From the IMG/VR virus record IMGVR_UViG_3300042891_000711, positions 62,001 to 126,000 of that record: 64,000 nt of DNA; one strand, 5' to 3'. The notes below the pieces were generated by a model. That model had not been told where the DNA came from. It saw nothing but the letters and a program-made list of their open reading frames with translations, and ran no database searches. Below are positions 1,312 to 52,201 of the stretch, piece by piece (the first letter of the stretch is position 1; every line of letters starts with the position of its first letter). A program made the position numbers and the translations under genes.

Positions 1312-1338
1312 CTTAAACAAGTATATTAGAGTGAAACT

Positions 1339-3291: not shown

Positions 3292-3299
3292 GGTATATT

Positions 3300-15243: not shown

Positions 15244-15255
15244 ATAATTACTTAT

Positions 15256-26835: not shown

Positions 26836-26837
26836 AA

Positions 26838-27287: not shown

Positions 27288-27317
27288 ACTAAATATAGTA
27301 ATAGCTACAGGATTACT

Positions 27318-32435: not shown

Positions 32436-33128
32436 ATGAGAATATATGATTTAAATCCCGTAGTTAACGAAGATAATGAAATGTCAGATGTCATTACTGC
32501 TCGCGGACTAGTAAATAGAGCATTAGATAATCCCGCTGCACGTCAGGAATACTTTGATTACATGACGCATCTGCGTAATAAACACGGTAAAGAATACAGC
32601 ACACGTATACATCAAAAAGCCACATCATTTGCTAAATCAGTAGACGAAACAATTAAAAAAGTAGGCAGCCAATACGAACTTGTTAGTAAATCGGGTAAGA
32701 ACCTAGGCAAGTATCCTACTAGAGCTGGTGCTGAGAAACGTGAGCAACAGGTTAATTATTTTAAACACGTTAAAGAAGATGCGTGGACTGGTGAAAATCC
32801 ACCGTGGCATAACGGTAATGATCAATGGAATGATGGTACTGACCAATGGCATAGTGCAGATGATGGTGCAGGTAGCAGTGCTGCAACTCCATCATCTGCA
32901 GGTCCGCTAACTGGTGAGATACCAGTTAAAGAAGAGTTTAATGCACAAGATGTTGTTAGTGTTGATGTTCCACTATTAATACGCTTACTTGAATATGCTC
33001 GCGAAGATGCTAAAACAGACATGGATTTACACACAGTAGCTGAACGATTAATTGATCTCAGTCAAGAAGGCGTTACACTAACAATGCAAGATTACGACAC
33101 AATTTGCAACACCAAGGAAACTGATTAA
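32436..33128 (+). CDS. modular putative internal head protein
   Basis: MRIYDLNPVVNE leader; modules after VDE, VKE, VKE. Confidence 0.65.
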   Translation: MRIYDLNPVVNEDNEMSDVITARGLVNRALDNPAARQEYFDYMTHLRNKHGKEYSTRIHQKATSFAKSVDETIKKVGSQYELVSKSGKNLGKYPTRAGAEKREQQVNYFKHVKEDAWTGENPPWHNGNDQWNDGTDQWHSADDGAGSSAATPSSAGPLTGEIPVKEEFNAQDVVSVDVPLLIRLLEYAREDAKTDMDLHTVAERLIDLSQEGVTLTMQDYDTICNTKETD

Positions 33129-35911
33129 TGAGTCTTATAAGTCAAACCAATTCATACACTACACCCGGAACATATACATACACTATTCCTCAAGGAGTAG
33201 GGTCGCTTGAATTTCATATATGGGGTGCAGGTGGAGCTGCAGGTGCATCTGGACCAGCTATTCAGGTACAAAGTGGCACGACTACAGCTCGAATACCAAG
33301 TGGTTCAGAACAAGTTCAAAGTGGAACGACTCGAGTTGAATCTGGTGTAGCACAAATACAAACTGGAACAACACAGGTACAAACTGGCACAACACAAGAA
33401 GCCTATACAGTTACTACTACTTGTTTTCTTGGTAATGCATTAATAAGCACACCATCCGGTCTTGTTGCTATCGAATCGCTGGCAATCGGTGATTTGGTGT
33501 ATGGGTTCGATGCATATAGCGAAACGGGTGAAGTAGTCTATGATGCAGAATTAGTAACATCACCAGTGACTAAATTGTTTAAACATACCTGGGAAGAAGC
33601 TGATGAATTTTCGTATTTGTTAGTAATTACACACGAACAAGGTGTATTAACTGTAACAGGCGGACACGAAATATTAACATCATCAAGAAAAGACACAACC
33701 TGTTATGATGGTTTCGTACGTGCAGAAAATTTAAGAGTAGGCGATGTACTTTATACTGAAGACGGTACTGCTTCTGTAATACAAAACATTATCCGTGGTG
33801 GCGAATATGAGATGGTATACAATCTTGAAATTGATGGTGTACACACATACGTTGCTGATGGCATTCGTGTTCATAATGGTATTATTAATAATAACAATAC
33901 TACCAACACCAAAGGACAATCTACTACTAATACCAAATTCAATAAAGGAACAACAACAAAAACATTGTATCGAGATGTTCCAGTATACGCAACTGTTCCT
34001 GTGTACACTACTGTACCAACTTATAGTGATGTTCCGACATATACTACACAAACTACATTTACTACAGTATATAATCCTGTATATGAATCAGTTTCCGGCG
34101 GTAGTGGTGCCAGCGGTGGGGCAGGCGGTTATGCATCGAGAAAAATCCAAGTTACTGCTGGCGATGTAATCGTAATTTCAGTTGGTAGTGCAGGAGTTGG
34201 ATCCATAGGTGGACAAAGTTCGTCATCAATTGGTTTCAACGGCGGCAATGGCGGAGTATCATCAAACGGTGGACGTGGAGGCGGTGGCGGTGCTGCCACC
34301 GTGATTACTGTAAATGGAACTATTGTTGCAGTTGCCGCAGGCGGCGCCGGTGGTGGCGGTGGCGGAACATCTGGATCGGCAGGTACTGCGGGAACAGCTG
34401 CATCCATTTCAGGAATTGGATCAGGTACACAAGGTGCCGGTCTATCGTCGGTTGCTGGTCCAGCAACAGGTGGCGGAGGCGGTGGTGGTTTTTATAGCGG
34501 ACTTGCTGGTGCAAGCGGTAATGCCGGCGGAGGTGGACAAGGCGGAGTAAGTTTCGGCACAGTAATTTATGGTGGTAGCGGAACAACTCCTGGAGGCAAC
34601 AACATATCAGTTTATCCAGGAAGAAATGTTGGTGCTGCAGCATTTGGTGGTGCAGCTTTATTAATATTCAATAAATCATTTAATATAAATGTAAAACGTG
34701 CTGGAACTTGGAATCCAGTTAACAGTGCCTGGGTTAAAGTCGGTGGTTCATGGAAAGAACTATTAAATGGATGGACTAAAGTTAGTGGTGTATGGAAACC
34801 ATTGATTTCTGCAGATGCTGTAGTTGGTTCTGAAAATTTAACAACTCCTGCTATAACATATTCGTTATCTGCAGATTCAGCAAGTATTACCGAAGGTGAT
34901 TCAGTGGTATTTACACTAGCAACCACAGGTATTGCCGCAGGTACATCGATTCCGTATACTGCTACAGGTATTGCGGCAGCCGATTTATCAGCCGGCGCAT
35001 TAACAGGCAATTTTATTGTTGGCACAACCGATACTATCACATTTACTCCTAGAGAGAATAATACCACAAATGGTACCAGAACATTACGTGTATCTATTGA
35101 TAATTCTACTGCGGCTGCAACTTGTACAGTATTAGACACATCATTGACTCCAGTGTATTCACTTGTCGGCAATGTTGCAACAATAAACGAGGGTGGATCA
35201 GTTACATTTACTTTATCAACTAGTTATGTTGATTCAGGCACAGTAATTCCATATTCAGTTAGTGGCATTAGTGCTGCAGACTTATCATCTGGATCGATGA
35301 CTGGCAATTTTATAGTCGGAAATGTAACCACTGCAGCATTTACTTTAGCATCAGATTCACTCACAGAAGGTGCTGAACGAATAACTATTACCTTACACAG
35401 TGTACCAGGAAGTGCAAGTTGCGCTATAGCTGATACATCGACTACACCTTATGTAGCATTTAGTGGCTCAATTACATTAAGTGGTAATGGTACATGGACT
35501 GTGCCAGATTATGTAACTTCGTTATCTGTTTCAGTAATAGGCGGTGGCGGCGGTGGTGGTGGCAACCACAACAATTGTGGTAACCGAGCACATGCTGGTG
35601 GTGCTGGTGGCGGTGGTTATACAAATTCAGACACACTATCAGTTTCCCCAGGACAAAAATTTACATATCGAGTAGGTGTCGGTGGAGCAGGTGGTGCGGC
35701 TAGTGCATTAGGTGGTACTGGTGTATCTACATTCTTTGGTTCAGTTTCGGCCGCTGGCGGCGGTGGTGGTGGTGGTGGTACGAAAGGCACGGCGGGTGTC
35801 GGTGGAGCAGGCACCAATGGTGGTATAGGCGGCTTATATACAGATAACTTAGGTAAAGCAGGTGGTAGTGGATCCATTAGTCTTTCTTGGACAGGATCAA
35901 GACCAGGATAA
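33128..35911 (+). CDS. glycine-rich tail fibre/adhesin with inserted Hint domain and Calx-beta/Ig-like repeats
   Basis: WGAGG/GGGGG glycine-rich domains, SITEGDSVVFTL repeats, Hint motifs. Confidence 0.8.
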   Translation: MSLISQTNSYTTPGTYTYTIPQGVGSLEFHIWGAGGAAGASGPAIQVQSGTTTARIPSGSEQVQSGTTRVESGVAQIQTGTTQVQTGTTQEAYTVTTTCFLGNALISTPSGLVAIESLAIGDLVYGFDAYSETGEVVYDAELVTSPVTKLFKHTWEEADEFSYLLVITHEQGVLTVTGGHEILTSSRKDTTCYDGFVRAENLRVGDVLYTEDGTASVIQNIIRGGEYEMVYNLEIDGVHTYVADGIRVHNGIINNNNTTNTKGQSTTNTKFNKGTTTKTLYRDVPVYATVPVYTTVPTYSDVPTYTTQTTFTTVYNPVYESVSGGSGASGGAGGYASRKIQVTAGDVIVISVGSAGVGSIGGQSSSSIGFNGGNGGVSSNGGRGGGGGAATVITVNGTIVAVAAGGAGGGGGGTSGSAGTAGTAASISGIGSGTQGAGLSSVAGPATGGGGGGGFYSGLAGASGNAGGGGQGGVSFGTVIYGGSGTTPGGNNISVYPGRNVGAAAFGGAALLIFNKSFNINVKRAGTWNPVNSAWVKVGGSWKELLNGWTKVSGVWKPLISADAVVGSENLTTPAITYSLSADSASITEGDSVVFTLATTGIAAGTSIPYTATGIAAADLSAGALTGNFIVGTTDTITFTPRENNTTNGTRTLRVSIDNSTAAATCTVLDTSLTPVYSLVGNVATINEGGSVTFTLSTSYVDSGTVIPYSVSGISAADLSSGSMTGNFIVGNVTTAAFTLASDSLTEGAERITITLHSVPGSASCAIADTSTTPYVAFSGSITLSGNGTWTVPDYVTSLSVSVIGGGGGGGGNHNNCGNRAHAGGAGGGGYTNSDTLSVSPGQKFTYRVGVGGAGGAASALGGTGVSTFFGSVSAAGGGGGGGGTKGTAGVGGAGTNGGIGGLYTDNLGKAGGSGSISLSWTGSRPG
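33422..33877 (+). other. Hint (intein-like/BIL) domain
   Basis: CFLGNALI (block A), LTVTGGHEI (block B), VYNLEIDGVHTYVADGIRVHN (blocks F/G); +1 residue is Gly. Confidence 0.88.
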
Positions 35912-35917: not shown

Positions 35918-35939
35918 TATAGTAGCACAGGCTACTATA
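35918..35939. other. intergenic hairpin
   Basis: TATAGTAGC-ACAG-GCTACTATA, followed by TAAGTA motif. Confidence 0.55.
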
Positions 35940-35976
35940 TAAGTAACAGTAACATCAATTAACTAAGGAAAGTTCA

Positions 35977-36315
35977 ATGTCAAAAATTACAATTAAAATT
36001 ATCGATATAGATCGTACGTCAAATAATATCATAGTAAAATATGCCAGTGAGGCAAGTGCAAAACCAATTGATGAATATTCAGCTATGGGTTTTCAAATAA
36101 CCGATACATCAATTCTAACACCAGAACAGTTTGTCGAATCTATTAGATACGAAGTATCACAGCACGTCGCAGTTAGAGATGCATTAGAAGCGCACACATC
36201 GGCACTAGATTTTAGTGCATGGAGTGGATATACAACTGAAGTCGATGCTAGTGTACTTGTAGCGTCAGCACCACCAGTAATAGATGCACTAGCGACCCCT
36301 GAAGTAGTCCTATGA
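35977..36315 (+). CDS. hypothetical protein (tail-fibre associated)
   Basis: AAGGAA RBS; follows fibre gene. Confidence 0.7.
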   Translation: MSKITIKIIDIDRTSNNIIVKYASEASAKPIDEYSAMGFQITDTSILTPEQFVESIRYEVSQHVAVRDALEAHTSALDFSAWSGYTTEVDASVLVASAPPVIDALATPEVVL

Positions 36316-36824
36316 TTTTAAATAATGCCCTCAATGCTGGTAACTTTGTTTACTGCATGATACACTGGAGCCCGCACGAAGAAATTGAATATTTCAACGA
36401 CGGTGATGGCCACTATCATCCATCTGTGTATGTTTTAGAGGGCAAGGGGTGGGCTGAATTTAAAACACCAGAAGGTGAAATATACATAAGTGAAGCCACT
36501 GGCGCTCCAGGAACAATTGTAGATACAAGTCATAGCAAGGGTAATTATCAAATTATCCGTACCATGGATAGTGGACTTACATTGTTTCACATAAACCCTG
36601 TACCAGCAACTAGAAATTTGCACACAGAAATAGTAAACGGTCCCATCACTCGCACAATTACTGCTGGTGATAAACGAGTAGTCGTTGTGGTTATTACGGG
36701 TCCAATTACTGCTAACGGTAAACAACTATCTAGTCTACAACATAGTAAAGTATTTCCCAGCAAGTCAGTAGAATTGATAATTCCAGAGCATGCAATATGC
36801 GCATTAGTGACCGAAATAAACTAG
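36312..36824 (+). CDS. cupin-like hypothetical protein
   Basis: HYH...YVLEGKG beta-rich pattern. Confidence 0.55.
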   Translation: MILNNALNAGNFVYCMIHWSPHEEIEYFNDGDGHYHPSVYVLEGKGWAEFKTPEGEIYISEATGAPGTIVDTSHSKGNYQIIRTMDSGLTLFHINPVPATRNLHTEIVNGPITRTITAGDKRVVVVVITGPITANGKQLSSLQHSKVFPSKSVELIIPEHAICALVTEIN

Positions 36825-37591
36825 CTATTAATCTACTAAATCCCTTTAGACAATTTGCTACGATATTACAACTGCTTTTGCCAGTTAGTATCTATCTTGG
36901 TATAACATCTGATGCAGGTGCAATGTGGTGGCTAGTTGCTGTTTTCTTTTACCTAGTAATCTACACAATGATTGGAAATAATATTGCACTGCATCGTTAT
37001 TTCACGCACGGACACTTTACAGTAGCAAAACCTGTTGAATACTTCTTTTTATGGTGCGGATCTATGATAGGCATGGGCGATCCGTTGAGCTATGCAATGA
37101 CGCATACTGTACATCACAATCCAAAATACACCGATACTCCTTTAGATCCACACGGCCCATCATGCGGACTACGTTCAATTCTATTTTGTTTTCAACGCCC
37201 GATTAATCCCAACATAACTCCTGTATTCAATAGACATGTTTTAGAATTAAGTAAAAGGTATTGGTGGTTACATAGATACTATGTTCCTATTATACTAGCC
37301 AATGCCGCACTTTTATGGATGATTGATTATAAAATATTCTTATTCTGCTGGTTAATCCCTGTGTCATTATCAATTTGGGGTATTGGGTTTGCTGTCTTAA
37401 GACAACATTGGCCAATGAAAGCTAATAACTGCCGTACACATTTAATTGAACCTTGGTACGAAGGTCTGCATTTAAATCATCACAATTGGCCAATGGCTCC
37501 GAATACTGCGATATATACTAATGAAATCGATTACACTTATCAATTTAGTAAAATATTTTTTCCTAAATTTAATACCAAAGGGCAACCGTGA
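36797..37591 (+). CDS. membrane fatty acid desaturase-like protein 1
   Basis: His boxes HRYFTH, HTVHH, HLNHH; DPHGP. Confidence 0.88.
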   Translation: MRISDRNKLAINLLNPFRQFATILQLLLPVSIYLGITSDAGAMWWLVAVFFYLVIYTMIGNNIALHRYFTHGHFTVAKPVEYFFLWCGSMIGMGDPLSYAMTHTVHHNPKYTDTPLDPHGPSCGLRSILFCFQRPINPNITPVFNRHVLELSKRYWWLHRYYVPIILANAALLWMIDYKIFLFCWLIPVSLSIWGIGFAVLRQHWPMKANNCRTHLIEPWYEGLHLNHHNWPMAPNTAIYTNEIDYTYQFSKIFFPKFNTKGQP

Positions 37592-38355
37592 ACAAATTTA
37601 TCAAATGGCTTATTCAACCTAATTATTTTTGGATGACTCTAATGCAGGTTATGTTGCCTGTATATCTATATCTAGCTGTTACCAGTGGTGCAGATTGGCT
37701 GTGGTGGATGGGTAGTTTTATCTTTTACTTCTTATATCTAGCTATCGGTAATAATATTGGCATGCACCGTTATTACTGTCATCATTACTTTACTATGAAC
37801 AGGTCCACAGAATGGTTTGTTGCTTGGTGTGCTATGATGGGCGGCATGGGCAGTCCAATATGCTATGCTAGTATTCATCAAGTACATCATAGAATACACG
37901 ATACTGAACAGGATCCGCATGGTCTAAATCGAGGATGGCGTAGCGTGCTGTACTATTTCCACAGACAAATAGATCAAAAAGAAATTAAATTTAATAGAAA
38001 CATGGCAGAATTAACAAAACGTTACGGATTTGTACATCAATTCTACTGGCCAGTTGTATTTGCTAACGCGGCTATATTTTATTTAATTAGTTGGAAAGCA
38101 TTGCTATTCTTATGGTTAATTCCTTGCAGTTTAACCTTGTGGGCAGTAGCATTAGTATTGTTAATGCAACACGACCAAGATGGTCCAAACAACAGTAGAA
38201 GTTATATGTGGTTTGGCTGGGGCGAAACATGGCATAAAAATCATCACGAAGACCAAAGTCTGGCAGATCATAGTCTAGGCAAGGGCGTCGACTGGACTTA
38301 CCAATTATCCAGATTATTAGCAAATGACCAATCCAATACAAACAAAAACAATTAA
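37588..38355 (+). CDS. membrane fatty acid desaturase-like protein 2
   Basis: HRYYCH, HQVHH, GETWHKNHH; DPHG. Confidence 0.9.
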   Translation: MNKFIKWLIQPNYFWMTLMQVMLPVYLYLAVTSGADWLWWMGSFIFYFLYLAIGNNIGMHRYYCHHYFTMNRSTEWFVAWCAMMGGMGSPICYASIHQVHHRIHDTEQDPHGLNRGWRSVLYYFHRQIDQKEIKFNRNMAELTKRYGFVHQFYWPVVFANAAIFYLISWKALLFLWLIPCSLTLWAVALVLLMQHDQDGPNNSRSYMWFGWGETWHKNHHEDQSLADHSLGKGVDWTYQLSRLLANDQSNTNKNN

Positions 38356-38941
38356 TCTAGATCTGGATCGACTTAAACGCGATGCCAGACGTATTAATAA
38401 TAAAATTATCAAAGCCTATAGTAACTTAGCGGTGCCTGATAATAAGTACTATCAAAACGAGCTAGCTAAACAGTTAGAAGGTGTGCCTATGAGTAGTAAA
38501 TATCATGACTACTATAATGCATTGACCTTTCCTTATCAAGAAATACATCAACTATACCGAGAAGCCTGTACATTCTTTAAGGAAGTTAATCAATATGATC
38601 AACCTTACTGTGTACATGCTTGGTTAAACTATTTAGAAAAAGGCGACAGTATTCCATGGCATAATCATTGGGGTGCCTTAAGTGGCTTGCACGAAACTTA
38701 TGTTTGTAGTTATTACATTAATGCAGAATCTAGCACCACTATATACAAATTCCCCAACGAAACCTACAATGTAGCTTGCAAAAACAACACTATTAACATG
38801 TACGAAGATGTAGGTGATGTTCACATGGTAGAGCCGTGGCAAGGTAATGAGCCGCGCATTAGTATTAGTATGGACTTTGTACCGTTAAAATACGTACATG
38901 CTACACCGTTTGTCTTAAATACTTGGATGCCGGTTGTATAA
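38324..38941 (+). CDS. 2OG-Fe(II) oxygenase-like protein
   Basis: AWLNY...WHNH...SYYI...HMV...RISISMD. Confidence 0.7.
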   Translation: MTNPIQTKTINLDLDRLKRDARRINNKIIKAYSNLAVPDNKYYQNELAKQLEGVPMSSKYHDYYNALTFPYQEIHQLYREACTFFKEVNQYDQPYCVHAWLNYLEKGDSIPWHNHWGALSGLHETYVCSYYINAESSTTIYKFPNETYNVACKNNTINMYEDVGDVHMVEPWQGNEPRISISMDFVPLKYVHATPFVLNTWMPVV

Positions 38942-38974
38942 ATAAACATAGTATATAATTAAGGAAGATTTTCA

Positions 38975-39688
38975 ATGAAAAAACTAGTATTATTAGTAGG
39001 TCTATTATTAAGCGTAAATGCTTATGCAGGCATCAATCAAGAGTGCCCTACACTAACAGCCGCAGGTGCAGCTACATACGCTGCCAAACCAGGCGATCAA
39101 GAAATTTGTCATAAGAACTACGCTGTTATCCATAGCTGTGCAGTTAAAGCACCTATTGCAGTATTTGAACGGTTGTCATTAGAAGACATGACAGGTCCTG
39201 CAAAACGTAAAGACGACTTCCGACCAGATCCAAAAGTTACTCCGGCATGTTCAGCTACCCTAGCTGACTATGCTACTGTAGGTCGTACACATGACCGTGG
39301 ACATATGAGCCCGGCTGGTAACAACACACAAGATCCAGCAATCATGAGTGAAAGTTTCTTCCTAAGCAATATGGAGCCACAAATTGCTAATAACAATCGT
39401 GGTATATGGAAACAGTTAGAAACATACGAACGTGAATGGGCTAAACAACCAGGTACAGATTATTACATTATTAGTGGTGGTATCTTTGATGCAGGCCATC
39501 AAAAAACAGGCAACGGCTTAGGTATTCCTACACGTTTATACAAGATTATTATTGAAAAGAATAGTAAGAAAGTTAAGGCTTACTTGATGCCAAACACAGC
39601 ATTACCTGTAGCAGACTTACCCAAATATGAAACTACAATAGCTAATGTAGAATCAGCAACTGGTCTTAAGTTTGCCCTACCTAAATAA
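38975..39688 (+). CDS. DNA/RNA non-specific endonuclease (NucA/EndA family) with signal peptide
   Basis: DRGHMSPA, SFFLSNMEPQ, NRGIWKQLE; MKKLVLL...NAYA signal. Confidence 0.92.
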   Translation: MKKLVLLVGLLLSVNAYAGINQECPTLTAAGAATYAAKPGDQEICHKNYAVIHSCAVKAPIAVFERLSLEDMTGPAKRKDDFRPDPKVTPACSATLADYATVGRTHDRGHMSPAGNNTQDPAIMSESFFLSNMEPQIANNNRGIWKQLETYEREWAKQPGTDYYIISGGIFDAGHQKTGNGLGIPTRLYKIIIEKNSKKVKAYLMPNTALPVADLPKYETTIANVESATGLKFALPK

Positions 39689-39690
39689 TA

Positions 39691-40455
39691 TTATTTTGCA
39701 GCTAATTTAAAAAATACTCTAACAAAATAATATTGAGGATTTATATACCTAACCCACGTGGGGCCTTTAAATATATGGCTCCACGTGGTATATTTTTCTC
39801 TGAAATCTTGATGATGTTCGTAATGCCACGCTTGATTTAAATTAAGTGGAAACAACCACGGATATGTTTTTTCTCCGTAGTGCAGAAGATAATAATCGTG
39901 TTGTACTTCTAATATAACTTTAAACAATATAGGTAATACGATTATATAGAAGTAATAATCAATACCAAATAATAATATAAAAATAATAGATAGTATCAGC
40001 TCTAGTTCTCGTAGATATTTAATTATAAATGGAAATTCTGTATATTGTTGTAATAAGATATTCATATTATCTATAGATGGCTTGCTAAATGGATTTAATC
40101 CAATCCAAAAATAGAAAATACCTTTATGCAATGTTGTTGTAAATATATCTTTGTCTGTTTTCCAATACAAATGATGATACCAGTGTGTTTTGATAGATGA
40201 CGATTTATCTGCATAAGTGTCCGGACTGACAATATAGATAAAACAATCAATTATATACCTAAAAAAAGTATTTTTTGGAAGTATATATCGATGTTCCACA
40301 TAATCATGGCCTATGATTTCCGCAAACATCCATACTATGTACGTAACAAGTAATGAGATTGTTAATAAATGCCAATTATTAAAATATAATAACCCGCTAA
40401 CGGCTATTATAATATAAGCATGCTGTTTAATAAATTCTATTAGAGTTTGTTTCAT
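39691..40455 (-). CDS. divergent desaturase-like membrane protein 3
   Basis: HDYVEH, HWYHH, HYEHH plus TM helices. Confidence 0.72.
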   Translation of the reverse strand: MKQTLIEFIKQHAYIIIAVSGLLYFNNWHLLTISLLVTYIVWMFAEIIGHDYVEHRYILPKNTFFRYIIDCFIYIVSPDTYADKSSSIKTHWYHHLYWKTDKDIFTTTLHKGIFYFWIGLNPFSKPSIDNMNILLQQYTEFPFIIKYLRELELILSIIFILLFGIDYYFYIIVLPILFKVILEVQHDYYLLHYGEKTYPWLFPLNLNQAWHYEHHQDFREKYTTWSHIFKGPTWVRYINPQYYFVRVFFKLAAK

Positions 40456-41233
40456 TTTTGGTAAATGCTATTAAAAATATCCAATACTGTAAGTTGATAT
40501 ATTTCCACCATTTACTGCCAAAATATAATTTATTTGGATTTTTATGATGACTAACGTGATATGCTGTATTAAACCAAATTGGTAACATCCATGGTAAATC
40601 TTTACAAGGTCGTTTACTTGTATGAAAAAAGATATCAGGGCCTGCACAATATACTATTACTATATATGTAAGAGGTAATACATAAAAAGATATGTAATTA
40701 GCAACGCCGAATAACAATATGTATACCACACTACATATTGTTAGTATCGTAAATCGATAGTTAACCAACCAATCAGGATAGTACCAAGTTGGCTGATACC
40801 TCGACACATCAATATCTAACATCATTGATGGTGTTGTTTTTTTATCAATCATGGTAAATGTATTACAAAAAAACATAAAGGTATTTTCATTGACTGCCGC
40901 TGTAACTGGATCTTGATTGATAAACCAAAATTTATGATGTATTATATGGCCGACAATATAACCTTTTTGATTTTTGGCCGATACAAATGGGGAATATATA
41001 TACGCTATCACTAAAAATAAATATCGTGTCAGTGAATGTTTAAATGTAATTATATTGTGTTGAGCATACTCATGAACAAATAATGTCAACATTGCGCATA
41101 TAACATATGAAAATATAAATCCCGATACCAGATTAACATAACCTAAATATGTCATTATGCTTAAAAATATAAGCAATAAAAGATAATAATAATCAACAAT
41201 TTTTATTTTAATAAAATTTAATAAGTTTAACAT
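40427..41233 (-). CDS. divergent desaturase-like membrane protein 4
   Basis: HEYAQH, HIIHH, HVSHH; start reassigned to ATG 41233 (MLNLLNF). Confidence 0.72.
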   Translation of the reverse strand: MLNLLNFIKIKIVDYYYLLLLIFLSIMTYLGYVNLVSGFIFSYVICAMLTLFVHEYAQHNIITFKHSLTRYLFLVIAYIYSPFVSAKNQKGYIVGHIIHHKFWFINQDPVTAAVNENTFMFFCNTFTMIDKKTTPSMMLDIDVSRYQPTWYYPDWLVNYRFTILTICSVVYILLFGVANYISFYVLPLTYIVIVYCAGPDIFFHTSKRPCKDLPWMLPIWFNTAYHVSHHKNPNKLYFGSKWWKYINLQYWIFLIAFTKNETNSNRIY

Positions 41234-41238
41234 AGTAA

Positions 41239-41250
41239 TATTTATAAATA
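41239..41250. promoter_or_regulatory. bidirectional late-promoter palindrome
   Basis: TATTTATAAATA gives TATAAATA on both strands between divergent genes. Confidence 0.75.
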
Positions 41251-41279
41251 CTAATTGTAAACAAAAATAAAGGTCCGGT

Positions 41280-42017
41280 ATGAAAATAACTGAAGGTGGG
41301 AATGTATTTAAACTAGCTGATGGTAGCGAAGCAACCGGACGTATCAATCGTGCAGATGTCATTCCTACAGTTAAATGGTTAGAGCAATTAACAGGACTTA
41401 ATCTAGTAGACAATATGCTAGGGTCAACTGGCTACAAAGAAACAAGTGGCGACCTAGACCTAGCAGTTGATGTAAGTAAAATCAGCAAAGATGTACTGGT
41501 ACAACAACTATTAAAGAAAGGCATTGAACCTACTGACATTAAAAAGACAGGCGACAGCGTACATTTTAAAACACCCATCAACGGTGAAGCAAAGAACGGC
41601 TACGTACAAACTGACTTTATGTTTGGTGATCCAAACTTCCAACGTTTTAGTATGACAGGTAGTCCAGAAGGTAGCCCATTCAAAGGCATGCATCGTCATG
41701 TATTACTTGCTAGTATTGCTAAAGCACAGGGCATGAAATGGTCATACAAGAATGGCCTAATGGACCGTACTACAAACGAAGTTATTTCAAAAGATCCAAG
41801 TGAAATTGCACACAAACTATTCAATGGTAGTGCCGCTGATCTAGCATCAGTTGAAACTATCGTTGCTAAGATTAAAAATCTACCTAACTACAATGCCTTA
41901 GTAGCAGATGCACGTGAAACATTAGGCAAGGAAAATGTACAACTACCGGAATCACAGCAGGCAATAGTAGGCGAAGGTTCGGCAGCATGGTTTAAGAACT
42001 GGAAGTCAGTGCTGTGA
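41280..42017 (+). CDS. Pol-beta superfamily nucleotidyltransferase with leader
   Basis: MKITE leader; LGSTG...SGDLDLAVD...VQTDFM. Confidence 0.8.
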   Translation: MKITEGGNVFKLADGSEATGRINRADVIPTVKWLEQLTGLNLVDNMLGSTGYKETSGDLDLAVDVSKISKDVLVQQLLKKGIEPTDIKKTGDSVHFKTPINGEAKNGYVQTDFMFGDPNFQRFSMTGSPEGSPFKGMHRHVLLASIAKAQGMKWSYKNGLMDRTTNEVISKDPSEIAHKLFNGSAADLASVETIVAKIKNLPNYNALVADARETLGKENVQLPESQQAIVGEGSAAWFKNWKSVL

Positions 42018-42955
42018 GAGCTAAGGAGTTTATCTTAGAAGGCGGTTGGGCAAGTACTTTAACACAAGGTACACATATCACACCTGCACTAGTTGATGTT
42101 GTTGTACAATCATTACCTGCATTTGAACAAGCATTAAATGCTTTCTTAAAAACCAAAGACCTAGCACCAGTTAAGATAGGCACGCCAGTTGGTAGTACAA
42201 CATACTACAAACGCGACCTTGCACAAAATCCTCAACGTGAATACGGTGACATTGATGTTAACTTCTTTGTGCCACGCTTGTCTGATATGTCGGACAATGC
42301 TAACGAACAAACATACAGTTCAGCTATTAAAGAGTTTTGCGACAGTAACCCTAACTACTCAACTAACAACGGCACAAATGTTATAATTAAAGTAGGCGAC
42401 GAATATGTACAAGTTGACTTTGTTACAGCATACTATGAGAACGAACAGTGGAGTCGTGCCTTAGGACCAGAGTACAATGTTAAAGGTGTACTAAGCGCAA
42501 GTTTATACTCATCACTAGCAGAAGCATTAAATCTCAGCTTTGGTGGACGTGGAGTACAGGTTAAATTACAAAATGGTGTGCCAGTTAGTTTTAGACAAAC
42601 TAAAGATACAGAGCTTAAAACCATAACAAATAATCCCGACACATGGGCAGTTGATATTGCTACATTCCTTGGTGCTAAAACTATCAGCGCACGTTTAGCC
42701 AAGTATCCAGGTATGGGTGACGAAATAAAAACTTCAAATACTATTAACAGTATTGTTGGCATTGCTGAAAGTTTAGGCCGTCCTGAGTTAATAGAACAAG
42801 TGAAAGCAATTTACATAAGTAAAATAAGCAAGGCAGTTAATAGCAGTAAGTTTGATAAAGCTGTGACATCAGAAGCTAAGAAAAAAGCTGAAGATACCAA
42901 AGCATTATTAACAAGAGAAGCACAGCGTATATTAGGACAGTTTGATGCGATTTAA
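42014..42955 (+). CDS. Pol-beta superfamily nucleotidyltransferase with leader
   Basis: MRAKEFILE leader; VGSTTY...YGDIDV...VQVDFV. Confidence 0.78.
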   Translation: MRAKEFILEGGWASTLTQGTHITPALVDVVVQSLPAFEQALNAFLKTKDLAPVKIGTPVGSTTYYKRDLAQNPQREYGDIDVNFFVPRLSDMSDNANEQTYSSAIKEFCDSNPNYSTNNGTNVIIKVGDEYVQVDFVTAYYENEQWSRALGPEYNVKGVLSASLYSSLAEALNLSFGGRGVQVKLQNGVPVSFRQTKDTELKTITNNPDTWAVDIATFLGAKTISARLAKYPGMGDEIKTSNTINSIVGIAESLGRPELIEQVKAIYISKISKAVNSSKFDKAVTSEAKKKAEDTKALLTREAQRILGQFDAI

Positions 42956-44297
42956 AGAATTTTTAAGAGAATACAGCAGAGAGAAAACAGTCAATGTCTT
43001 TGGCAACAAACTTGTTGCGGCATTAGGCAAGGATAAGAGCCACACTCTTTCTGGTACACAGTTAGGCACGGATCGTGCGTTCATTGATCAAAAGATCAAA
43101 GTTAATGATATGATTACAGCAGAACAACGTCAAATAATTATCGATCACATCATGGTTGTAATTGAAAATTCTGACCCTACAGCAAACAAAGAGTATGTAC
43201 AGTGGTTGACTAAAGTATATGCTAACCAAGGTATTAAACTAGAAGATATAATAAGTCGTGGTAACAGTGCGCTTAAAATGTATCACGAATTCAAAGTTAA
43301 AAAAATATTACCAGCAGAATATAGAGACATTGGTCGCATTGACTTTGCTGGCTTAGAAGCAATAGCACAAAATCTTGACCTACGTAATGCCTTAGCCGCT
43401 AAAGAAGAACAAGAAGCCGCTAAGACTGTAGACAAGGGCGAAGCTGAAACTGTATTTGAAAATGCTGCAGTGCGTATCATTGTACCCAAGAATGAAGCAG
43501 CATCCGGTTACTATGGACAAGGTACACGTTGGTGTACTGCTGGACGTGACAACAATATGTACGATCGTTATGCTCGTGATGGTGACTTGTATATCTTACT
43601 ACCTAAGAAACCCGACTACGAAGGTGAGAAATATCAACTACACTTTAGTAGCAATCAGTTTATGGACGAAGGTGATAACTACGTAGACAGCGTAAAAGAC
43701 CTAATAACTAAACGCTTTGGCAATTTATTACCATTCTTTATGGAGCGCGAGCCTTCACTTAAAGATTGGTTAGTGTTTACTCCAGATGAGGTATTAAAAC
43801 CATTATTGGCTAAAATTAAAACAGCCGTAAACGACCACGTAAGCGAAATAGTCAACGACTGGGAAGTACAAGACGACTACTGGTGGGATCACCTACGCAG
43901 TGAAGGATATGTATATCCAGAAGGTCACGACGAAGAAGGCGAGATTGACTTTGATGCTGCGGCAGATGCCGATCTAAGTTACACTGATTGGAACTACGAA
44001 GCCAGCGACTTTATTCGAACAATTAATAATGCTGTAGATCTAACGCCAGAAGAAGTGCGCGAAATTGCCCAAGAGGAAGAAGATGATTACAACGGAGATG
44101 TGGGTGTTAATGACCTTGATACTATCATAGAACGCAGTATATCAAAAAATATTGGTAGAAATAGTAGTGACGGTGGTGTGATAGAATGGATTAAAGATCA
44201 CATTTATATTAAGAAAACTGGTGGTGATGGAGCATGGGACGTTAGTTTGCTGTACACAGACAAAGAAGGAAAGCGTGCAGAATACGCAATACACTAA
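42945..44297 (+). CDS. PcfJ-like domain protein with leader
   Basis: MRFKEFLRE leader; YGQGTRWCTA...KYQLHF. Confidence 0.65.
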   Translation: MRFKEFLREYSREKTVNVFGNKLVAALGKDKSHTLSGTQLGTDRAFIDQKIKVNDMITAEQRQIIIDHIMVVIENSDPTANKEYVQWLTKVYANQGIKLEDIISRGNSALKMYHEFKVKKILPAEYRDIGRIDFAGLEAIAQNLDLRNALAAKEEQEAAKTVDKGEAETVFENAAVRIIVPKNEAASGYYGQGTRWCTAGRDNNMYDRYARDGDLYILLPKKPDYEGEKYQLHFSSNQFMDEGDNYVDSVKDLITKRFGNLLPFFMEREPSLKDWLVFTPDEVLKPLLAKIKTAVNDHVSEIVNDWEVQDDYWWDHLRSEGYVYPEGHDEEGEIDFDAAADADLSYTDWNYEASDFIRTINNAVDLTPEEVREIAQEEEDDYNGDVGVNDLDTIIERSISKNIGRNSSDGGVIEWIKDHIYIKKTGGDGAWDVSLLYTDKEGKRAEYAIH

Positions 44298-44298
44298 T

Positions 44299-45000
44299 AT
44301 GAGAGCTAGAGACTTTACAAAGAACAACGTTGCTTATAACAAACAACTAAATCCAGTGGCCTGGGACAATAATCAATTAAACGATGAAGTGCGAGATCGA
44401 CTACTAGAGATTGCTGAACGTTTTGTCAGCTACTTAGAGATTCCTAATTTTAAAGTAGAAGATGTTGTACTCACAGGTAGTATGGCCAACTACAACTGGA
44501 CTAAGTTTAGTGATTTTGATGTGCATGTTGTTACTAACTACAGTGACCTACAATGTGATGATATTGCCGAAGCGTTCTATCGTGCCAAGAAACAAATTTG
44601 GAATGACGGGCACGATATTACTATCTACGGTTATGATGTAGAATTGTATGTAGAAGATGTTGCGCAACCTCCAGTTAGCGAAGGTGTATATAGTTTGTTA
44701 AACAATAAGTGGCTTAAAACTCCCGACTTTAAAGTGCCATCAATCGATCGTGCTAGTGTTAATGCCAAAGTATTAGATCTACGTAGCCAAATTGATCATG
44801 CTATTGTAGCCGCTGATGATCCAGAAGATATTAAACGTATATCAGAAAAGATTCGTAAAATGCGCCGTGCAGGATTAGATGCTGGCGGCGAATTCAGCAC
44901 AGAAAATCTAGCATTTAAAATCCTACGTAATATGAAGTACATGGATAAATTAAGTAAAGCATATCGTCAACAACAAGACGATGATTTGAGTTTAAAATAA
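44299..45000 (+). CDS. Pol-beta superfamily nucleotidyltransferase with leader
   Basis: MRARDF leader; LTGSMANYNWTKFSDFDVH...DVELYVED; start reassigned to 44299. Confidence 0.82.
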   Translation: MRARDFTKNNVAYNKQLNPVAWDNNQLNDEVRDRLLEIAERFVSYLEIPNFKVEDVVLTGSMANYNWTKFSDFDVHVVTNYSDLQCDDIAEAFYRAKKQIWNDGHDITIYGYDVELYVEDVAQPPVSEGVYSLLNNKWLKTPDFKVPSIDRASVNAKVLDLRSQIDHAIVAADDPEDIKRISEKIRKMRRAGLDAGGEFSTENLAFKILRNMKYMDKLSKAYRQQQDDDLSLK

Positions 45001-46004: not shown

Positions 46005-46005
46005 T

Positions 46006-46314
46006 ATGAGAGCCAATGAATTCTTAACCGAGTCGTACGAGTTTTTTGATACTATAGTAGATCAAATCAAAGCTCAAGTGCCAGCAGAAGAAATATGGTT
46101 TCACGGTAGCAGGGTAATTGGAACTGAACACGATGAAAGTGACTGGGATATCTTAGTTATTGTTCCTGATAACATAGTAGGTGATGAGTATATCAATGTT
46201 ACTAGGATATTACAATCTATAGCAAGAAGATACGAAAATTTTGATATACAACCTGCTCGTGCGTCAAACAATATTGCCCGTATAGCAAGAGAAGAAGGCG
46301 AACGAATAGATTAA
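46006..46314 (+). CDS. minimal nucleotidyltransferase (MNT-like) with leader
   Basis: MRANEFLTE leader; IWFHGSRVIG...SDWDILV. Confidence 0.85.
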   Translation: MRANEFLTESYEFFDTIVDQIKAQVPAEEIWFHGSRVIGTEHDESDWDILVIVPDNIVGDEYINVTRILQSIARRYENFDIQPARASNNIARIAREEGERID

Positions 46315-50990: not shown

Positions 50991-51410
50991 ATGACCAACT
51001 GGGAAACTTACGTTAAAGAATCCTATGAGCTTATTAAAGAAGCTGAAACTGCACTATCAATCACATTAGAACACAATGTTGAAGCATACGTTGTACACTT
51101 GTTCGCACACTTCCTAGACAAACCCAATGTCAATACAGAACCTGTGGGCATTAAACTAATGGCCAGTACCAATCTACCCGTAGCACAACGTAAGATATTA
51201 CTCAAAGATGTAGGCGATGAATGCTTGTTAATCAATGCTATGGAATGGAACCGACGTCGTTGGCCTACTGATACCTACTATGCTGAAATGGGGCAATCTG
51301 CTTATGTTACACGTGCTGTTGTGGCTAGGCCTGTAGAAGATATCTACGACGATTTGGCTATGGAATTTACTACAGTTACACAGGTTCTACGTAGATGTAG
51401 AATTAGTTAA
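50991..51410 (+). CDS. hypothetical protein
   Basis: ATG 50991 (MTNWETY); EAYVVHL...LKDVGDECLL...MGQSAY. Confidence 0.7.
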   Translation: MTNWETYVKESYELIKEAETALSITLEHNVEAYVVHLFAHFLDKPNVNTEPVGIKLMASTNLPVAQRKILLKDVGDECLLINAMEWNRRRWPTDTYYAEMGQSAYVTRAVVARPVEDIYDDLAMEFTTVTQVLRRCRIS

Positions 51411-52139
51411 TTTCATTAATTTCATTGCTATTAACACCCTGCAATACAACCAACTAGTATCAATTTCCCACCAATACCGATTGAAGTACGGAGTAGTTGT
51501 ATCATTATGATGATGCGCATGCAATACTTCACCGCCGCCGAATATACCCGGAAAAAATATTTTTGATTTATCCTTGCCACTATTGCCTGCATAGGTAAAC
51601 CCAATTTTATGATAGCCATAGTTTGATAATATTACAGCACAGGGATTAAAGACATAAAGAAAAAATGCGCCTATTACTGCACCAGGCACGCCAAATAATA
51701 TAGTCAGCACAGCCCACAATATAATTGTTCCCAATCTTGGATATTTACTATATAGATTAAGTTCAATCCAATCAATGGCAGTTATGATATCTGGTGCATA
51801 TAATTTCATTTCCTCGTCGCTGATATAATAAGGACGGCCTAGTTCATTGTGTTTATAGTCAAGCATCTGCGTAAATGTTAATTGATAAGGACTATGTGGG
51901 TCTAGCTCAGTATCACTATACTTGTGATGTTTTCTGTGTTGGGCGGCATAGTGTTGCATCCAATTGGGCCAAGAATACTGCATGGTAATCCATACCCAAA
52001 ATCTAAAAAAATGTTCTAGTCCAGGTGCAAAGCTAAAATAATGATGGCCTTTACCTCGATGTATGTAGATGGAAAATACCACAAATGTTACATGCATTAT
52101 TATTAAAAATGTAATTATAGCTGCGGTTAACCCAAACAT
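51387..52139 (-). CDS. membrane fatty acid desaturase-like protein 5 (delta-9-like)
   Basis: HRGKGH, HRKHH, DPHSP, GEVLHAHHH, WWEID. Confidence 0.9.
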   Translation of the reverse strand: MFGLTAAIITFLIIMHVTFVVFSIYIHRGKGHHYFSFAPGLEHFFRFWVWITMQYSWPNWMQHYAAQHRKHHKYSDTELDPHSPYQLTFTQMLDYKHNELGRPYYISDEEMKLYAPDIITAIDWIELNLYSKYPRLGTIILWAVLTILFGVPGAVIGAFFLYVFNPCAVILSNYGYHKIGFTYAGNSGKDKSKIFFPGIFGGGEVLHAHHHNDTTTPYFNRYWWEIDTSWLYCRVLIAMKLMKLTNSTST

Positions 52140-52201
52140 TGTGCGCCTCTTTGTATTATCATACTTATATATCAGCGTCGGTAATAATAAATTTTATAGT
52201 G

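What the first reader, a model, noticed from the sequence alone, without database searches (positions are those of the whole stretch)
36797..41233. Expansion of membrane desaturase-like genes next to the tail fibre (five in the window)
Seen: four His-box proteins here plus a fifth at 51387-52139, with cupin and 2OG-Fe(II) neighbours, preceded by TAAATA/TAAGTA motifs. The two minus-strand copies are more AT-rich with altered first boxes (HDYVEH, HEYAQH). Established: fatty acid desaturases are known phage auxiliary genes, usually in low copy. Inference: late remodelling of host lipids (lysis, exclusion) or modification of a non-lipid substrate such as virion fibres.
Basis: partly seen in the sequence, partly recalled or inferred. 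Interest (0 to 1): 0.62.

Follow-up and report, generated by a model that had tools for sequence, protein, structure and literature searches.

The report
Five membrane desaturase genes in lake phage
A large phage from lake water carries five intact genes for small membrane fatty-acid-desaturase-type enzymes, all behind late-gene promoter motifs. This probably lets it alter host membrane lipids late in infection. Phages with five such genes have been reported before.

Summary
The window lies in a 219 kb jumbo-phage record from lake water, estimated 62% complete. That record holds exactly five ORFs of 250-268 aa with the three-box, eight-histidine signature of membrane di-iron desaturases.

They are not a recent burst. 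They fall into three deep lineages: A (D1, D2), B (D3, D4) and C (D5). Lineages A and C match SCD1 and DesA-type delta-9 desaturases by sequence. Lineage B escapes Pfam, but its model folds like SCD1 (Z 11) and a profile comparison links it to A.

All five are under purifying selection (dN/dS 0.10-0.27). Each transcription unit follows a TATAA[AG]TA motif that also precedes the portal, baseplate and tail genes, so it is a T4-type late promoter motif.

D1 and D2 sit in a conserved operon with a cupin-fold protein and a 2OG oxygenase. In nine sister phage contigs this operon also carries a FabF-like ketoacyl-ACP synthase, which points to fatty-acyl substrates.

The D3-D4 pair varies: one close relative lacks it, and others carry a 400-aa version in the D4 slot.

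The most likely function is late, oxygen-dependent desaturation of host membrane acyl chains, with a different specificity in each lineage. No expression data exist. Two Arctic brine viruses with five desaturase copies each are already published, so novelty is modest.

The parts
33128..35911 (+). Upstream neighbour: 927-aa glycine-rich protein with an internal HINT domain; a possible fibre
   Evidence: Pfam PT-HINT 8.3e-11 and Gly_rich_2 3.8e-9. Weak phrog_863 'tail fiber assembly' hit at 4e-10.
35938..35945 (+). Late-type promoter motif TATAAGTA, 31 nt upstream of the p112 start; heads the p112-cupin-D1-D2-2OG unit
   Evidence: Conserved in L016, L064 and L017.
35977..36315 (+). p112, first gene of the operon; function unknown
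   Evidence: ORF. Conserved with the module in 8 or more viral contigs. dN/dS 0.09.
36312..36824 (+). p170, a cupin-fold protein with a conserved GHxH...EG motif; overlaps D1 by 28 nt
   Evidence: Alignment A5. Model at pLDDT 73. Foldseek top hits are cupins and bicupins.
36797..37591 (+). D1, lineage A desaturase, 264 aa; boxes HRYFTH, HTVHH followed by DPH, and HLNHH
   Evidence: The family profile hits SCD1 (4ZYO) at 8.9e-10. dN/dS 0.10.
37588..38355 (+). D2, lineage A desaturase, 255 aa, 41% identical to D1; its GTG start overlaps the D1 stop by 4 nt
   Evidence: dN/dS 0.11.
38324..38941 (+). 2OG-Fe(II) oxygenase-like protein, 205 aa; overlaps D2 by 32 nt
   Evidence: phrog_81 at 5.7e-14. 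PF13759 at 19.7 bits, below the 27-bit cut-off. dN/dS 0.03.
38937..38944 (+). Late-type promoter motif TATAAATA, 30 nt upstream of the nuclease gene
   Evidence: Conserved in L016, L064, L012 and L017.
38975..39688 (+). Endonuclease (Endonuclease_NS family), probably secreted, interposed between the two desaturase pairs; probably not part of the lipid function
   Evidence: Pfam PF01223 at 1.5e-35. phrog_14168 at 1.8e-44. The hydrophobic N-terminus that suggests a signal peptide is visible.
39691..40455 (-). D3, lineage B desaturase, 254 aa; boxes HDYVEH, HWYHH, HYEHH
   Evidence: AF2 model at pLDDT 87.9. Best PDB matches are SCD1, Z 11.0 and 10.8. dN/dS 0.11.
40427..41233 (-). D4, lineage B desaturase, 268 aa; boxes HEYAQH, HIIHH, HVSHH; overlaps the D3 start by 29 nt. 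The longer TTG-initiated ORF reaching 41413 is probably spurious
   Evidence: Pfam FA_desaturase at 22.4 bits, below threshold. dN/dS 0.27. The start is conserved in L016 and L064.
41239..41250 (.). Palindromic TATTTATAAATA holding TATAAATA on both strands: a divergent late-type promoter motif for D4-D3 (minus strand, ending 5 nt before the ATG) and for the 245-aa gene (plus strand)
   Evidence: Conserved in L016 and L064.
51387..52139 (-). D5, lineage C desaturase, 250 aa; boxes HRGKGH, HRKHH followed by DPH, and HAHHH; syntenic with DNA polymerase B
   Evidence: NCBIfam DesA_fam_desat at 2.9e-42. Pfam at 26.2 bits, below threshold. An ortholog sits beside PolB in L004. dN/dS 0.18.
52162..52169 (-). 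Late-type promoter motif TATAAGTA, 22 nt upstream of D5
   Evidence: Conserved in L153 and, as TATAAATA, in L004.

Best explanation
The five ORFs encode intact, minimal membrane di-iron oxygenases of the stearoyl-CoA / acyl-lipid delta-9 desaturase type. Each is 250-268 aa, with four transmembrane helices and nine conserved histidines. They belong to three old, mainly virus-borne lineages: A (D1, D2), B (D3, D4) and C (D5). They are arranged as three units: p112-cupin-D1-D2-2OG, D4-D3, and D5 alone. Each unit follows a T4-type late promoter motif. The inferred mechanism is as follows. Late in infection the enzymes insert into the host cytoplasmic membrane. They use O2 and electrons from a host carrier, since none is encoded in the 219 kb held. 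They then introduce double bonds, or possibly hydroxyl groups, into fatty-acyl chains of host lipids. The lineages probably differ in position, chain length, carrier or head-group specificity rather than simply adding dosage. What is shown: family, fold, conserved ligand residues, selection, promoter-motif placement, and the gene-order link to fatty-acid synthesis in sister phages. What is inferred: timing, substrate, product and the benefit to the phage.
For: Eight histidines in three boxes are invariant across the five proteins. A ninth histidine in or after TM4 is conserved within each lineage. In D5 the N-x3-H aligns with the same motif of SCD1. The lineage A profile finds only SCD1 in the PDB (4ZYO 8.9e-10, 4YMK 5e-8), with all three boxes and the DPH motif aligned. 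D5 matches NCBIfam DesA-family desaturase at 2.9e-42. The D3 model (pLDDT 87.9) is closest to SCD1, with Z 11.0 and 10.8 over 217-226 residues. Profile comparison of B against A gives probability 95.6% and E 1.2e-8 across all three boxes. Of 47 sampled B-type representatives, 26 pass E 0.01 to PF00487. dN/dS is 0.10, 0.11, 0.11, 0.27 and 0.18 for D1-D5. TATAA[AG]TA is depleted in the genome (23 hits against about 58 expected from composition). Sixteen of the 23 lie 3-45 nt upstream of an ATG opening an ORF of 60 aa or more, against a 12.5% background (P 3.5e-10). The same motif precedes the portal, baseplate hub and tail genes and is conserved before the orthologous units in relatives. The cupin-D1-D2-2OG module is conserved at 42-65% identity in 8 or more viral contigs. 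Nine contigs also carry a FabF-like ketoacyl-ACP synthase II between the cupin and D1. Cyanophage desaturases of the same superfamily were shown to be delta-9 C16 desaturases in yeast ole1 (PMC5776448).
Against: None of the five reaches Pfam's gathering score on its own. D5 scores 145 bits against a 400-bit DesA cut-off and covers only positions 9-241 of 385. The B lineage lacks the HRxxxH and DPH motifs of delta-9 enzymes. The superfamily also includes hydroxylases and ketolases, so the chemistry is not fixed by the fold. No ferredoxin, cytochrome b5 or rubredoxin motif was found in the 219 kb. This phage itself has no ketoacyl synthase, ACP or FabH. No RNA run holds the sequence, so timing rests on a motif alone. 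The host is unknown. Co-transcription with a cupin and a 2OG oxygenase fits a dedicated pathway as well as it fits bulk membrane remodelling.
Confidence: 0.6

Rival explanations
1. The D1-D2 operon is a dedicated tailoring pathway. Together with the cupin and the 2OG oxygenase, and in sister phages a FabF-like synthase and an SDR, it makes or destroys one particular lipid-like molecule. Candidates are a poly-unsaturated or oxygenated fatty acid, an oxylipin or fatty-acid signal, or an alkyl-polyketide lipid. On this view it does not tune bulk membrane fluidity.
For: Overlapping start and stop codons link cupin, D1, D2 and the 2OG gene. This gene order is conserved in 8 or more diverged contigs. 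FabF-like and SDR-like genes lie inside the module in relatives. A distant viral contig (L150) has an SDR, a type III PKS/FabH-like gene, three tandem desaturases and two 2OG oxygenases. D1 and D2 have been kept as a pair since before phages now 58-60% identical diverged.
Against: No ACP, thioesterase or transporter was seen in the window's genome. D3-D4 and D5 are separate units, and D5 lies 10 kb away. The cupin model is of only moderate confidence. No product can be predicted.
Confidence: 0.25
2. The enzymes modify envelope lipids that act as receptors or barriers, such as lipid A acyl chains, ornithine lipids or sphingolipids. This would exclude superinfecting phages or prepare lysis.
For: A His-box enzyme paired with a 2OG oxygenase recalls the bacterial pairs that hydroxylate ornithine lipid or lipid A (OlsE with OlsC or LpxO). 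This comes from general knowledge and was not tested here. The genes sit in a late, variable accessory region next to a fibre-like gene. Cellular homologues nested in lineage A come from Sphingomonadales MAGs.
Against: The sequence affinities are to SCD1 and DesA-type desaturases, not to the FA_hydroxylase family. One of 47 B-type relatives hit PF04116, weakly. Scs7p gave only Z 3.7. Late expression is poorly timed for exclusion. The host is unknown.
Confidence: 0.08
3. The proteins act on a non-lipid substrate such as virion fibres, as the first reader suggested as an alternative.
For: Only the proximity to the glycine-rich, fibre-like gene and the shared late promoter motif.
Against: All five are predicted integral membrane proteins with the SCD1 architecture. 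The linked gene in sister phages is a fatty-acid synthase component. D5 and its orthologs sit beside DNA polymerase, not a fibre gene.
Confidence: 0.03
4. Some of the copies are decaying or non-catalytic membrane proteins, or are ORF artefacts.
For: Pfam scores are below threshold. D4 has the highest dN/dS (0.27), has lost the N-terminal domain present in its 400-aa relatives, and its ninth histidine is shifted. One close relative lacks D3 and D4 altogether.
Against: All the histidine ligands are kept and there are no stops. dN/dS is well below 1 for all five. Identical D3-D4 sequence is recovered from independent lake metagenomes. Orthologs are widespread.
Confidence: 0.04

Closest known systems
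Virus-encoded fatty acid desaturases of Arctic cryopeg-brine viruses (Zhong et al. 2020, mSystems; PMC7300359)
   Same: Two viruses carry five FAD copies each. The proteins have three histidine motifs, were modelled on SCD1 (4ZYO), fall in clades without microbial members, and come from a cold habitat.
   Different: Those viruses come from marine-derived permafrost brine; this one comes from lake water. Sequence relatedness could not be tested because their sequences are not held here. That paper proposes expression on entry and host-to-virus transfers. Here the promoter motif is late-type and the copies are old viral lineages. The operon with a cupin and a 2OG oxygenase (and FabF in sister phages), and the D3-D4 polymorphism, are not described there.
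Cyanophage vFAD-I and vFAD-II (Roitman et al. 2018, ISME J; PMC5776448)
   Same: Phage-borne membrane delta-9-type desaturases with three histidine boxes. Activity was shown experimentally (C16 delta-9) in yeast ole1.
   Different: Those are a single gene per phage, close to the host DesC clades. tblastn with D1 and D5 finds nothing in 50,697 deposited phage records at E 1e-3, so the present genes are not members of those clades.
Mammalian stearoyl-CoA desaturase 1 (PDB 4ZYO, 4YMK)
   Same: The only solved structures found by the lineage A profile, and the best structural match of the D3 model. Box 1, box 2 with DPH, and box 3 align, and in D5 the N-x3-H of TM4 aligns as well.
   Different: The phage proteins are about 250-268 aa, against chains of 318-339 aa. 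They lack the N-terminal extension and share 10-13% identity. The acyl-CoA head-group site and a cytochrome b5 partner are not evident.
Bacterial DesA-family phospholipid desaturase (NCBIfam NF049918)
   Same: D5 matches at 2.9e-42 over profile positions 9-241.
   Different: The score of 145 bits is far below the 400-bit equivalog cut-off, and the C-terminal third of the 385-position model is absent. D1 and D2 match only marginally, and D3 and D4 not at all.
T4-type late promoter (TATAAATA)
   Same: An eight-base motif, depleted genome-wide, placed just upstream of the portal, baseplate, tail and desaturase units.
   Different: A G is tolerated at position 6. No gp55-type late sigma factor was looked for. 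In two cases the motif ends only 5 nt before the ATG.

Membership tests
Membrane-bound fatty acid desaturase superfamily (Pfam PF00487) | Three histidine boxes, HX(3-4)H, HX(2-3)HH and HX(2-3)HH, giving eight ligand histidines | tested here: met
   Invariant in all five proteins and across 47 diverse B-type relatives.
Membrane-bound fatty acid desaturase superfamily (Pfam PF00487) | Score at or above Pfam's gathering threshold (29.7 bits) | tested here: not met
   D4 scores 22.4 bits and D5 26.2 bits; D1-D3 have no hit. Homologs at 50-60% identity, the 379-aa B-type protein of L004 (36.5 bits) and 26 of 47 B-type representatives do match, so membership is by transitive homology.
Membrane-bound fatty acid desaturase superfamily (Pfam PF00487) | Four transmembrane helices in two hairpins with an SCD1-like fold | tested here: met
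   Shown for D3. The model has helices 5-25, 28-54, 148-163 and 165-192. SCD1 gives Z 11.0 and 10.8 over 217-226 aligned residues. Hydropathy of the other four is consistent, but they were not modelled.
Membrane-bound fatty acid desaturase superfamily (Pfam PF00487) | O2-dependent desaturation or hydroxylation of an acyl chain | not testable with these tools
   Needs expression and lipid analysis.
Delta-9 (SCD / DesC / DesA, 'first') desaturases | Box 1 HRxxxH; box 2 HxxHH followed by (S/T)(D/E)TxxDPH; box 3 HxxHH | tested here: met
   Met for D1, D2 and D5 (aligned to SCD1). Not met for D3 and D4, which have HDYVEH and HEYAQH and no DPH.
Delta-9 (SCD / DesC / DesA, 'first') desaturases | Significant sequence match to a characterised delta-9 enzyme | tested here: met
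   The lineage A profile hits SCD1 at 8.9e-10. D5 hits the DesA family at 2.9e-42. For lineage B the sequence test fails, with no PDB hit; only fold and profile-profile links exist.
NCBIfam DesA_fam_desat equivalog (NF049918) | Score of at least 400 bits over the full 385-position model | tested here: not met
   D5 scores 145 bits over positions 9-241. D1 scores 16.9 and D2 12.7. D3 and D4 have no hit.
Cyanophage vFAD-I / vFAD-II clades | Close sequence similarity to cyanophage and picocyanobacterial DesC | tested here: not met
   tblastn of D1 and D5 against 50,697 phage records gives no match at E 1e-3.
Multi-copy virus-encoded FAD sets (as in PMC7300359) | Several FAD genes on one viral genome, with SCD-like predicted fold, in virus-only clades | tested here: met
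   There are five copies in 219 kb. The D3 model has the SCD1-like fold. Clades A, B and C are dominated by metagenomic and viral sequences, with cellular relatives at 36% identity or less. Direct relatedness to the published sequences was not tested.
T4-type late transcription unit | TATAAATA-like motif shortly upstream of the gene, shared with virion structural genes | tested here: met
T4-type late transcription unit | Late timing of transcripts; a gp55-type sigma factor encoded | not tested
   No RNA run holds the sequence. The sigma factor was not searched for.

The most novel reading that the evidence does not exclude
This clade of lake jumbo phages carries its own multi-enzyme lipid-tailoring pathway. 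It would comprise a cupin, two or more non-redundant desaturases and a 2OG oxygenase, plus a FabF-like condensing enzyme and a reductase in sister phages. Late in infection it would make a lipid the host cannot make, such as a poly-unsaturated or oxygenated acyl chain. The B-lineage enzymes, some with an extra 120-aa N-terminal domain of unknown fold, would be a new functional class within the desaturase superfamily.
Probability: 0.2. Interest if true: 0.7.

Novelty: new member of a known kind. Interest (0 to 1): 0.42.

Why it matters
Phage desaturases are usually treated as single host-derived auxiliary genes for membrane fluidity. This case suggests otherwise for one group of freshwater jumbo phages. 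They maintain several anciently diverged, virus-specific desaturase lineages behind late-type promoter motifs. Some sit in a conserved operon with other oxygenases, and in sister phages with a fatty-acid condensing enzyme. If the lineages differ in specificity, the phage would be doing more than adjusting fluidity and would be rewriting the acyl composition of the host membrane. The minimal enzymes of about 250 aa would also be compact models for SCD-type catalysis. The presence or absence of D3-D4, and the allele swap in the D4 slot among near-identical phages, offer a natural experiment on the fitness value of these genes.

Tried and rejected
**Searches that found nothing**
- Megablast of the 6 kb region, and tblastn of D1 and D5, against deposited phage genomes gave no match.
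- The lineage B profile has no sequence hit in the PDB. Foldseek's own E-value for SCD1 was only 0.09; the structural re-alignment gave Z 11.
- A motif scan for ferredoxin, cytochrome b5 or rubredoxin in the 219 kb found nothing, only one glutaredoxin-like CPFC ORF. Such a scan is crude.
- No ketoacyl synthase, ACP or FabH was found in the held part of the genome. About 38% of the genome is missing.

**Ideas considered and rejected**
- Recent tandem duplication. D2 branches at the base of clade A with orthologs from other phages. Tandem D1-type plus D2-type pairs occur in phages 58-60% identical. D3 and D4 are only 26% identical.
- Recent foreign origin of D3-D4, inferred from low GC. The deficit lies in codon positions 1 and 2. 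GC3 is within about one sd of the genome mean, and B-type genes are AT-rich in all relatives.
- Insertion of D3-D4 in the window's lineage. A distant relative (L017) has a D3-type gene in the same slot, so loss in L012 is the more parsimonious reading.

**Steps that could not be run**
- Searching the whole 205 kb relative (L004's record) for further copies: the record is not held.
- A viral-contig scan with the broad B alignment: no stretch was conserved enough.
- Expression: no RNA run holds the sequence. Laying contigs from four lake metagenomes showed presence only.

**Not attempted**
- No complex prediction was run, because no binding claim is made.
- Host identity was not pursued.

Full report
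**Context.** The window is bases 62,001-126,000 of a 218,902-base IMG/VR virus record that CheckV estimates to be 62% complete. Its family-B DNA polymerase is 43-51% identical to those of jumbo myoviruses such as Sinorhizobium phage Phosso, Agrobacterium phage Atu_ph07 and the PBECO4-like phages. Near-identical DNA occurs in 24 lake-water metagenome runs, and none of them is RNA. The object is therefore an uncultured freshwater jumbo phage with an unknown host.

**The observation.**
- D1, 36797-37591 (+), 264 aa
- D2, 37588-38355 (+), 255 aa
- D3, 39691-40455 (-), 254 aa
- D4, 40427-41233 (-), 268 aa
- D5, 51387-52139 (-), 250 aa

Aligned, they share only 20-41% identity. They nevertheless keep eight invariant histidines in three boxes, HxxxxH, HxxHH and HxxHH. 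A profile built from the five finds exactly these five places in the whole record. The altered first boxes of D3 (HDYVEH) and D4 (HEYAQH) are as reported. The AT-richness of D3 and D4 is also real (GC 0.28 and 0.27). The deficit sits mainly in codon positions 1 and 2, so it reflects a composition rich in Ile, Phe, Tyr, Lys and Asn. Their GC3 is within about one standard deviation of the genome's long ORFs, and B-type genes are AT-rich in every relative examined. Low GC is therefore not evidence of recent foreign origin.

**Family and fold.** Taken alone, none of the five reaches Pfam's threshold for FA_desaturase. D4 scores 22.4 bits, D5 scores 26.2, and D1-D3 score nothing. Other evidence settles the assignment.
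- D5 matches the NCBIfam DesA-family desaturase model at 2.9e-42. The score is 145 bits, below the equivalog cut-off of 400, and covers only positions 9-241 of 385.
- D1 has 96 metagenomic homologs. Many of them carry PF00487, and JGI names some of them stearoyl-CoA desaturase.
- A profile of this lineage finds only SCD1 in the PDB (4ZYO at 8.9e-10, 4YMK at 5e-8). Box 1, box 2 with its trailing DPH motif, and box 3 all align.
- D3 and D4 belong to a lineage with no precomputed Pfam hit among its first eight homologs and no sequence hit in the PDB.
- A confident AlphaFold model of D3 (pLDDT 87.9) has two helical hairpins and is closest to SCD1. The scores are Z 11.0 and 10.8 with 217-226 residues aligned, and the yeast hydroxylase Scs7p scores only 3.7.
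- A profile-profile comparison links lineage B to lineage A across all three boxes, at probability 95.6% and E 1.2e-8.
- An exhaustive profile search finds 289 B-type clusters. Of 47 sampled, 26 match PF00487. Across these 47, the eight box histidines and one aspartate are invariant, and a ninth histidine is nearly so.

A ninth conserved histidine in or after the fourth helix is also present in lineage A. In D5 it aligns, together with the asparagine four residues before it, to the same N-x3-H motif of SCD1. The proteins are thus minimal SCD-type enzymes that lack the N-terminal extension of the mammalian protein.

**Three old lineages, not a recent burst.** BLAST groups D1 with D2 (41% identity, E 2e-66) and D3 with D4 (26%, E 2e-20). 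D5 is linked only weakly to D1 and D2 (E 6e-7). A maximum-likelihood tree of 108 sequences gives three well-supported clades, with SH-aLRT of 97-100.
- In clade A, the D2 lineage branches at the base together with orthologs from other contigs.
- In clade B, the D4 lineage, the D3 lineage and a 379-aa protein from a relative are separate deep branches.

Synteny agrees with the tree. A tandem D1-type plus D2-type pair occurs in phages only 58-60% identical. A distant relative (L017) has one A-type and one D3-type gene in the same positions. The D5 ortholog sits beside DNA polymerase in a 205 kb relative, where a 379-aa B-type gene is adjacent to it. Cellular relatives of lineage A are at most 36% identical. 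The closest are four genes on high-GC contigs of Sphingomonadales MAGs that nest inside the viral clade on a long branch.

**Selection and population variation.** Against a relative with flanking genes 93-97% identical (L016), dN/dS is 0.10 for D1, 0.11 for D2, 0.11 for D3 and 0.27 for D4. D5 against a 94% identical copy gives 0.18.

The B pair is nevertheless variable. An IMG/VR relative with 91-98% identical flanking proteins (L012) has no D3 or D4. In it, the nuclease gene is followed by a terminator-like hairpin and then the 245-aa gene. In other relatives (L064, L065) the D4 slot holds a 400-aa protein. That protein is only 44% identical to D4 and has an extra N-terminal domain of about 120 aa, while the flanking genes are 86-96% identical. 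About half of all B-type clusters have this extra domain, and it matches no Pfam family. Contigs from independent lake metagenomes carry the window's D3-D4 sequence unchanged.

**Transcription signals.** It occurs 6 times in the window against 17.5 +/- 4.2 expected from shuffles. The six sites lie upstream of:
- the p112-cupin-D1-D2-2OG unit (35938)
- the nuclease gene (38937)
- D4-D3 and, on the other strand, the 245-aa gene, both within one palindrome (41239-41250)
- D5 (52162)
- one unrelated gene (15249)

Genome-wide there are 23 sites, against about 58 expected from base composition. Sixteen of them lie 3-45 nt upstream of an ATG that opens an ORF of 60 aa or more, against a background of 12.5% (P 3.5e-10). 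Other genes behind the motif include the portal (phrog_213, 3e-103), a baseplate hub, a tail lysin or tape-measure-like protein and tail-fibre-like proteins. The motif is conserved before the orthologous units in relatives down to about 50% protein identity. This is the pattern of T4-type late promoters, whose consensus TATAAATA I cite from established knowledge. Late timing is an inference, because no transcript data exist. Overlapping starts and stops (28, 4 and 32 nt in the plus-strand unit; 29 nt between D4 and D3) argue for co-transcription within each unit.

**Neighbours and the link to fatty-acid metabolism.** The 170-aa protein before D1 has no family hit. It has a conserved GHxH...EG motif and a moderately confident model that matches cupins and bicupins. 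The 205-aa protein after D2 is a 2OG-Fe(II) oxygenase-like protein. The order p112, cupin, D1-type, D2-type, 2OG, nuclease is conserved at 42-65% identity in at least eight IMG/VR contigs. In nine contigs a 412-aa FabF-like beta-ketoacyl-ACP synthase II lies between the cupin and the D1-type gene. It matches PF00109 at 2.5e-35, PF02801 at 5.9e-24 and TIGR03150 at 8e-79, below the equivalog cut-off. One of these contigs also has an SDR-like gene after the D2-type gene. The window's genome has no such synthase, no ACP and no FabH in the part that is held. A more distant viral contig carries an SDR, a type III PKS/FabH-like gene, three tandem desaturases and two 2OG oxygenases. This gene-order evidence favours fatty-acyl substrates. 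It leaves open whether the target is bulk membrane lipid or a special product.

**How common, and how new.** Other IMG/VR records hold 1-5 copies. A 90.9 kb fragment (26% complete) has five: D1-type, D5-type, a long B-type and two further lineages. Tandem pairs or triples are frequent among the viral loci fetched.

In the literature, cyanophage desaturases are single genes shown to be delta-9 C16 desaturases in yeast (PMC5776448). Lake Baikal viruses carry an acyl-CoA desaturase (PMC7678222). Most relevant here, two Arctic cryopeg-brine viruses were reported to carry five FAD copies each, in clades without microbial members and modelled on 4ZYO (PMC7300359). Searches pairing 'jumbo phage' or 'huge phage' with 'desaturase' found nothing relevant. 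The multi-copy phenomenon is therefore known. The following appear to be additions to it:
- the three-lineage anatomy
- the late-type promoter motifs
- the conserved oxygenase operon and its FabF link
- the B lineage with its extra domain
- the D3-D4 polymorphism

**Verdict.** The best-supported mechanism is late, oxygen-dependent modification, most likely desaturation, of host fatty-acyl chains by five non-redundant enzymes that depend on host electron donors (confidence about 0.6). The main rival is a dedicated lipid-tailoring pathway built around the D1-D2 operon (about 0.25). Modification of virion fibres is disfavoured. I rate this a new member of a known kind, of moderate interest.

Noticed in passing
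window 42014-46314 and 50312-50989: Six ORFs, five consecutive at 42014-46314 and one at 50312, begin with a shared N-terminal motif: MRAKEFILE, MMRFKEFLRE, MRARDFTKN (an internal ATG near 44299), MRAREFITE, MRANEFLTE and MKSNEFLSE. From memory, this resembles the capsid-targeting sequence of T4 internal proteins, with an I/L-x-E prohead-protease site. The ORFs may be an array of packaged, ejected proteins.
   Followed up: no
window 33128-35911 (residues about 96-253): The glycine-rich, fibre-like 927-aa protein contains a HINT / pretoxin-HINT domain (PF07591 at 8.3e-11). Its orthologs vary in length: 923, 794 and 861 aa.
   Followed up: partly
L064:9758-10960 and L065:10847-12049, against window 40427-41233: In phages whose flanking genes are 86-96% identical, the D4 slot holds a 400-aa protein only 44% identical to D4. 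It has an extra N-terminal domain of about 120 aa with no Pfam match. About half of the 150 best B-type clusters have this longer form.
   Followed up: partly
L012:2557-2672, against window 39689-41279: A close relative (91-98% identical flanking proteins) lacks D3 and D4 altogether. It has a terminator-like hairpin in their place.
   Followed up: yes
window 39003-39714: The nuclease gene, probably secreted, recruits contigs at 10-25 times the summed depth of its neighbours in four lake metagenomes, with many variant positions. The gene is therefore shared by many more lake phages than the desaturase genes are.
   Followed up: no
window 41234-41246 and 15244-15256 (minus strand): In two cases the TATAA[AG]TA motif ends only 5 nt before the ATG and there is no Shine-Dalgarno sequence. 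This spacing is conserved for D4 in L016 and L064. The transcripts may be leaderless, or the true starts may lie elsewhere.
   Followed up: no
L018-L021 (Sphingomonadales MAG contigs): Four short desaturase genes on contigs of 56-62% GC nest inside the otherwise viral clade A on a long branch. This suggests transfer between phage and bacterium, but the direction is unresolved.
   Followed up: partly
L150 (IMGVR_UViG_3300006926_001567), 296-6340: A viral contig carries an SDR-like gene, a type III PKS/FabH-like gene, three tandem desaturases and two 2OG-Fe(II) oxygenases in a row. It looks like a phage-borne lipid or polyketide tailoring cluster.
   Followed up: partly
window 40427-41413 (minus strand): The longest ORF for D4 starts at a TTG and overlaps the 245-aa gene on the other strand. 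Orthologs and the promoter motif indicate that the ATG at 41233 is the real start.
   Followed up: yes
window 23450-25759, 26008-28034 and 46423-49650: Other accessory genes in the window: a ClpB-like two-domain AAA+ ATPase (phrog_4871 at 1.8e-240), a glycosyltransferase-like protein and a cytidylyltransferase. There is also a 1075-aa protein whose ortholog in L004 carries Amidoligase_2.
   Followed up: no
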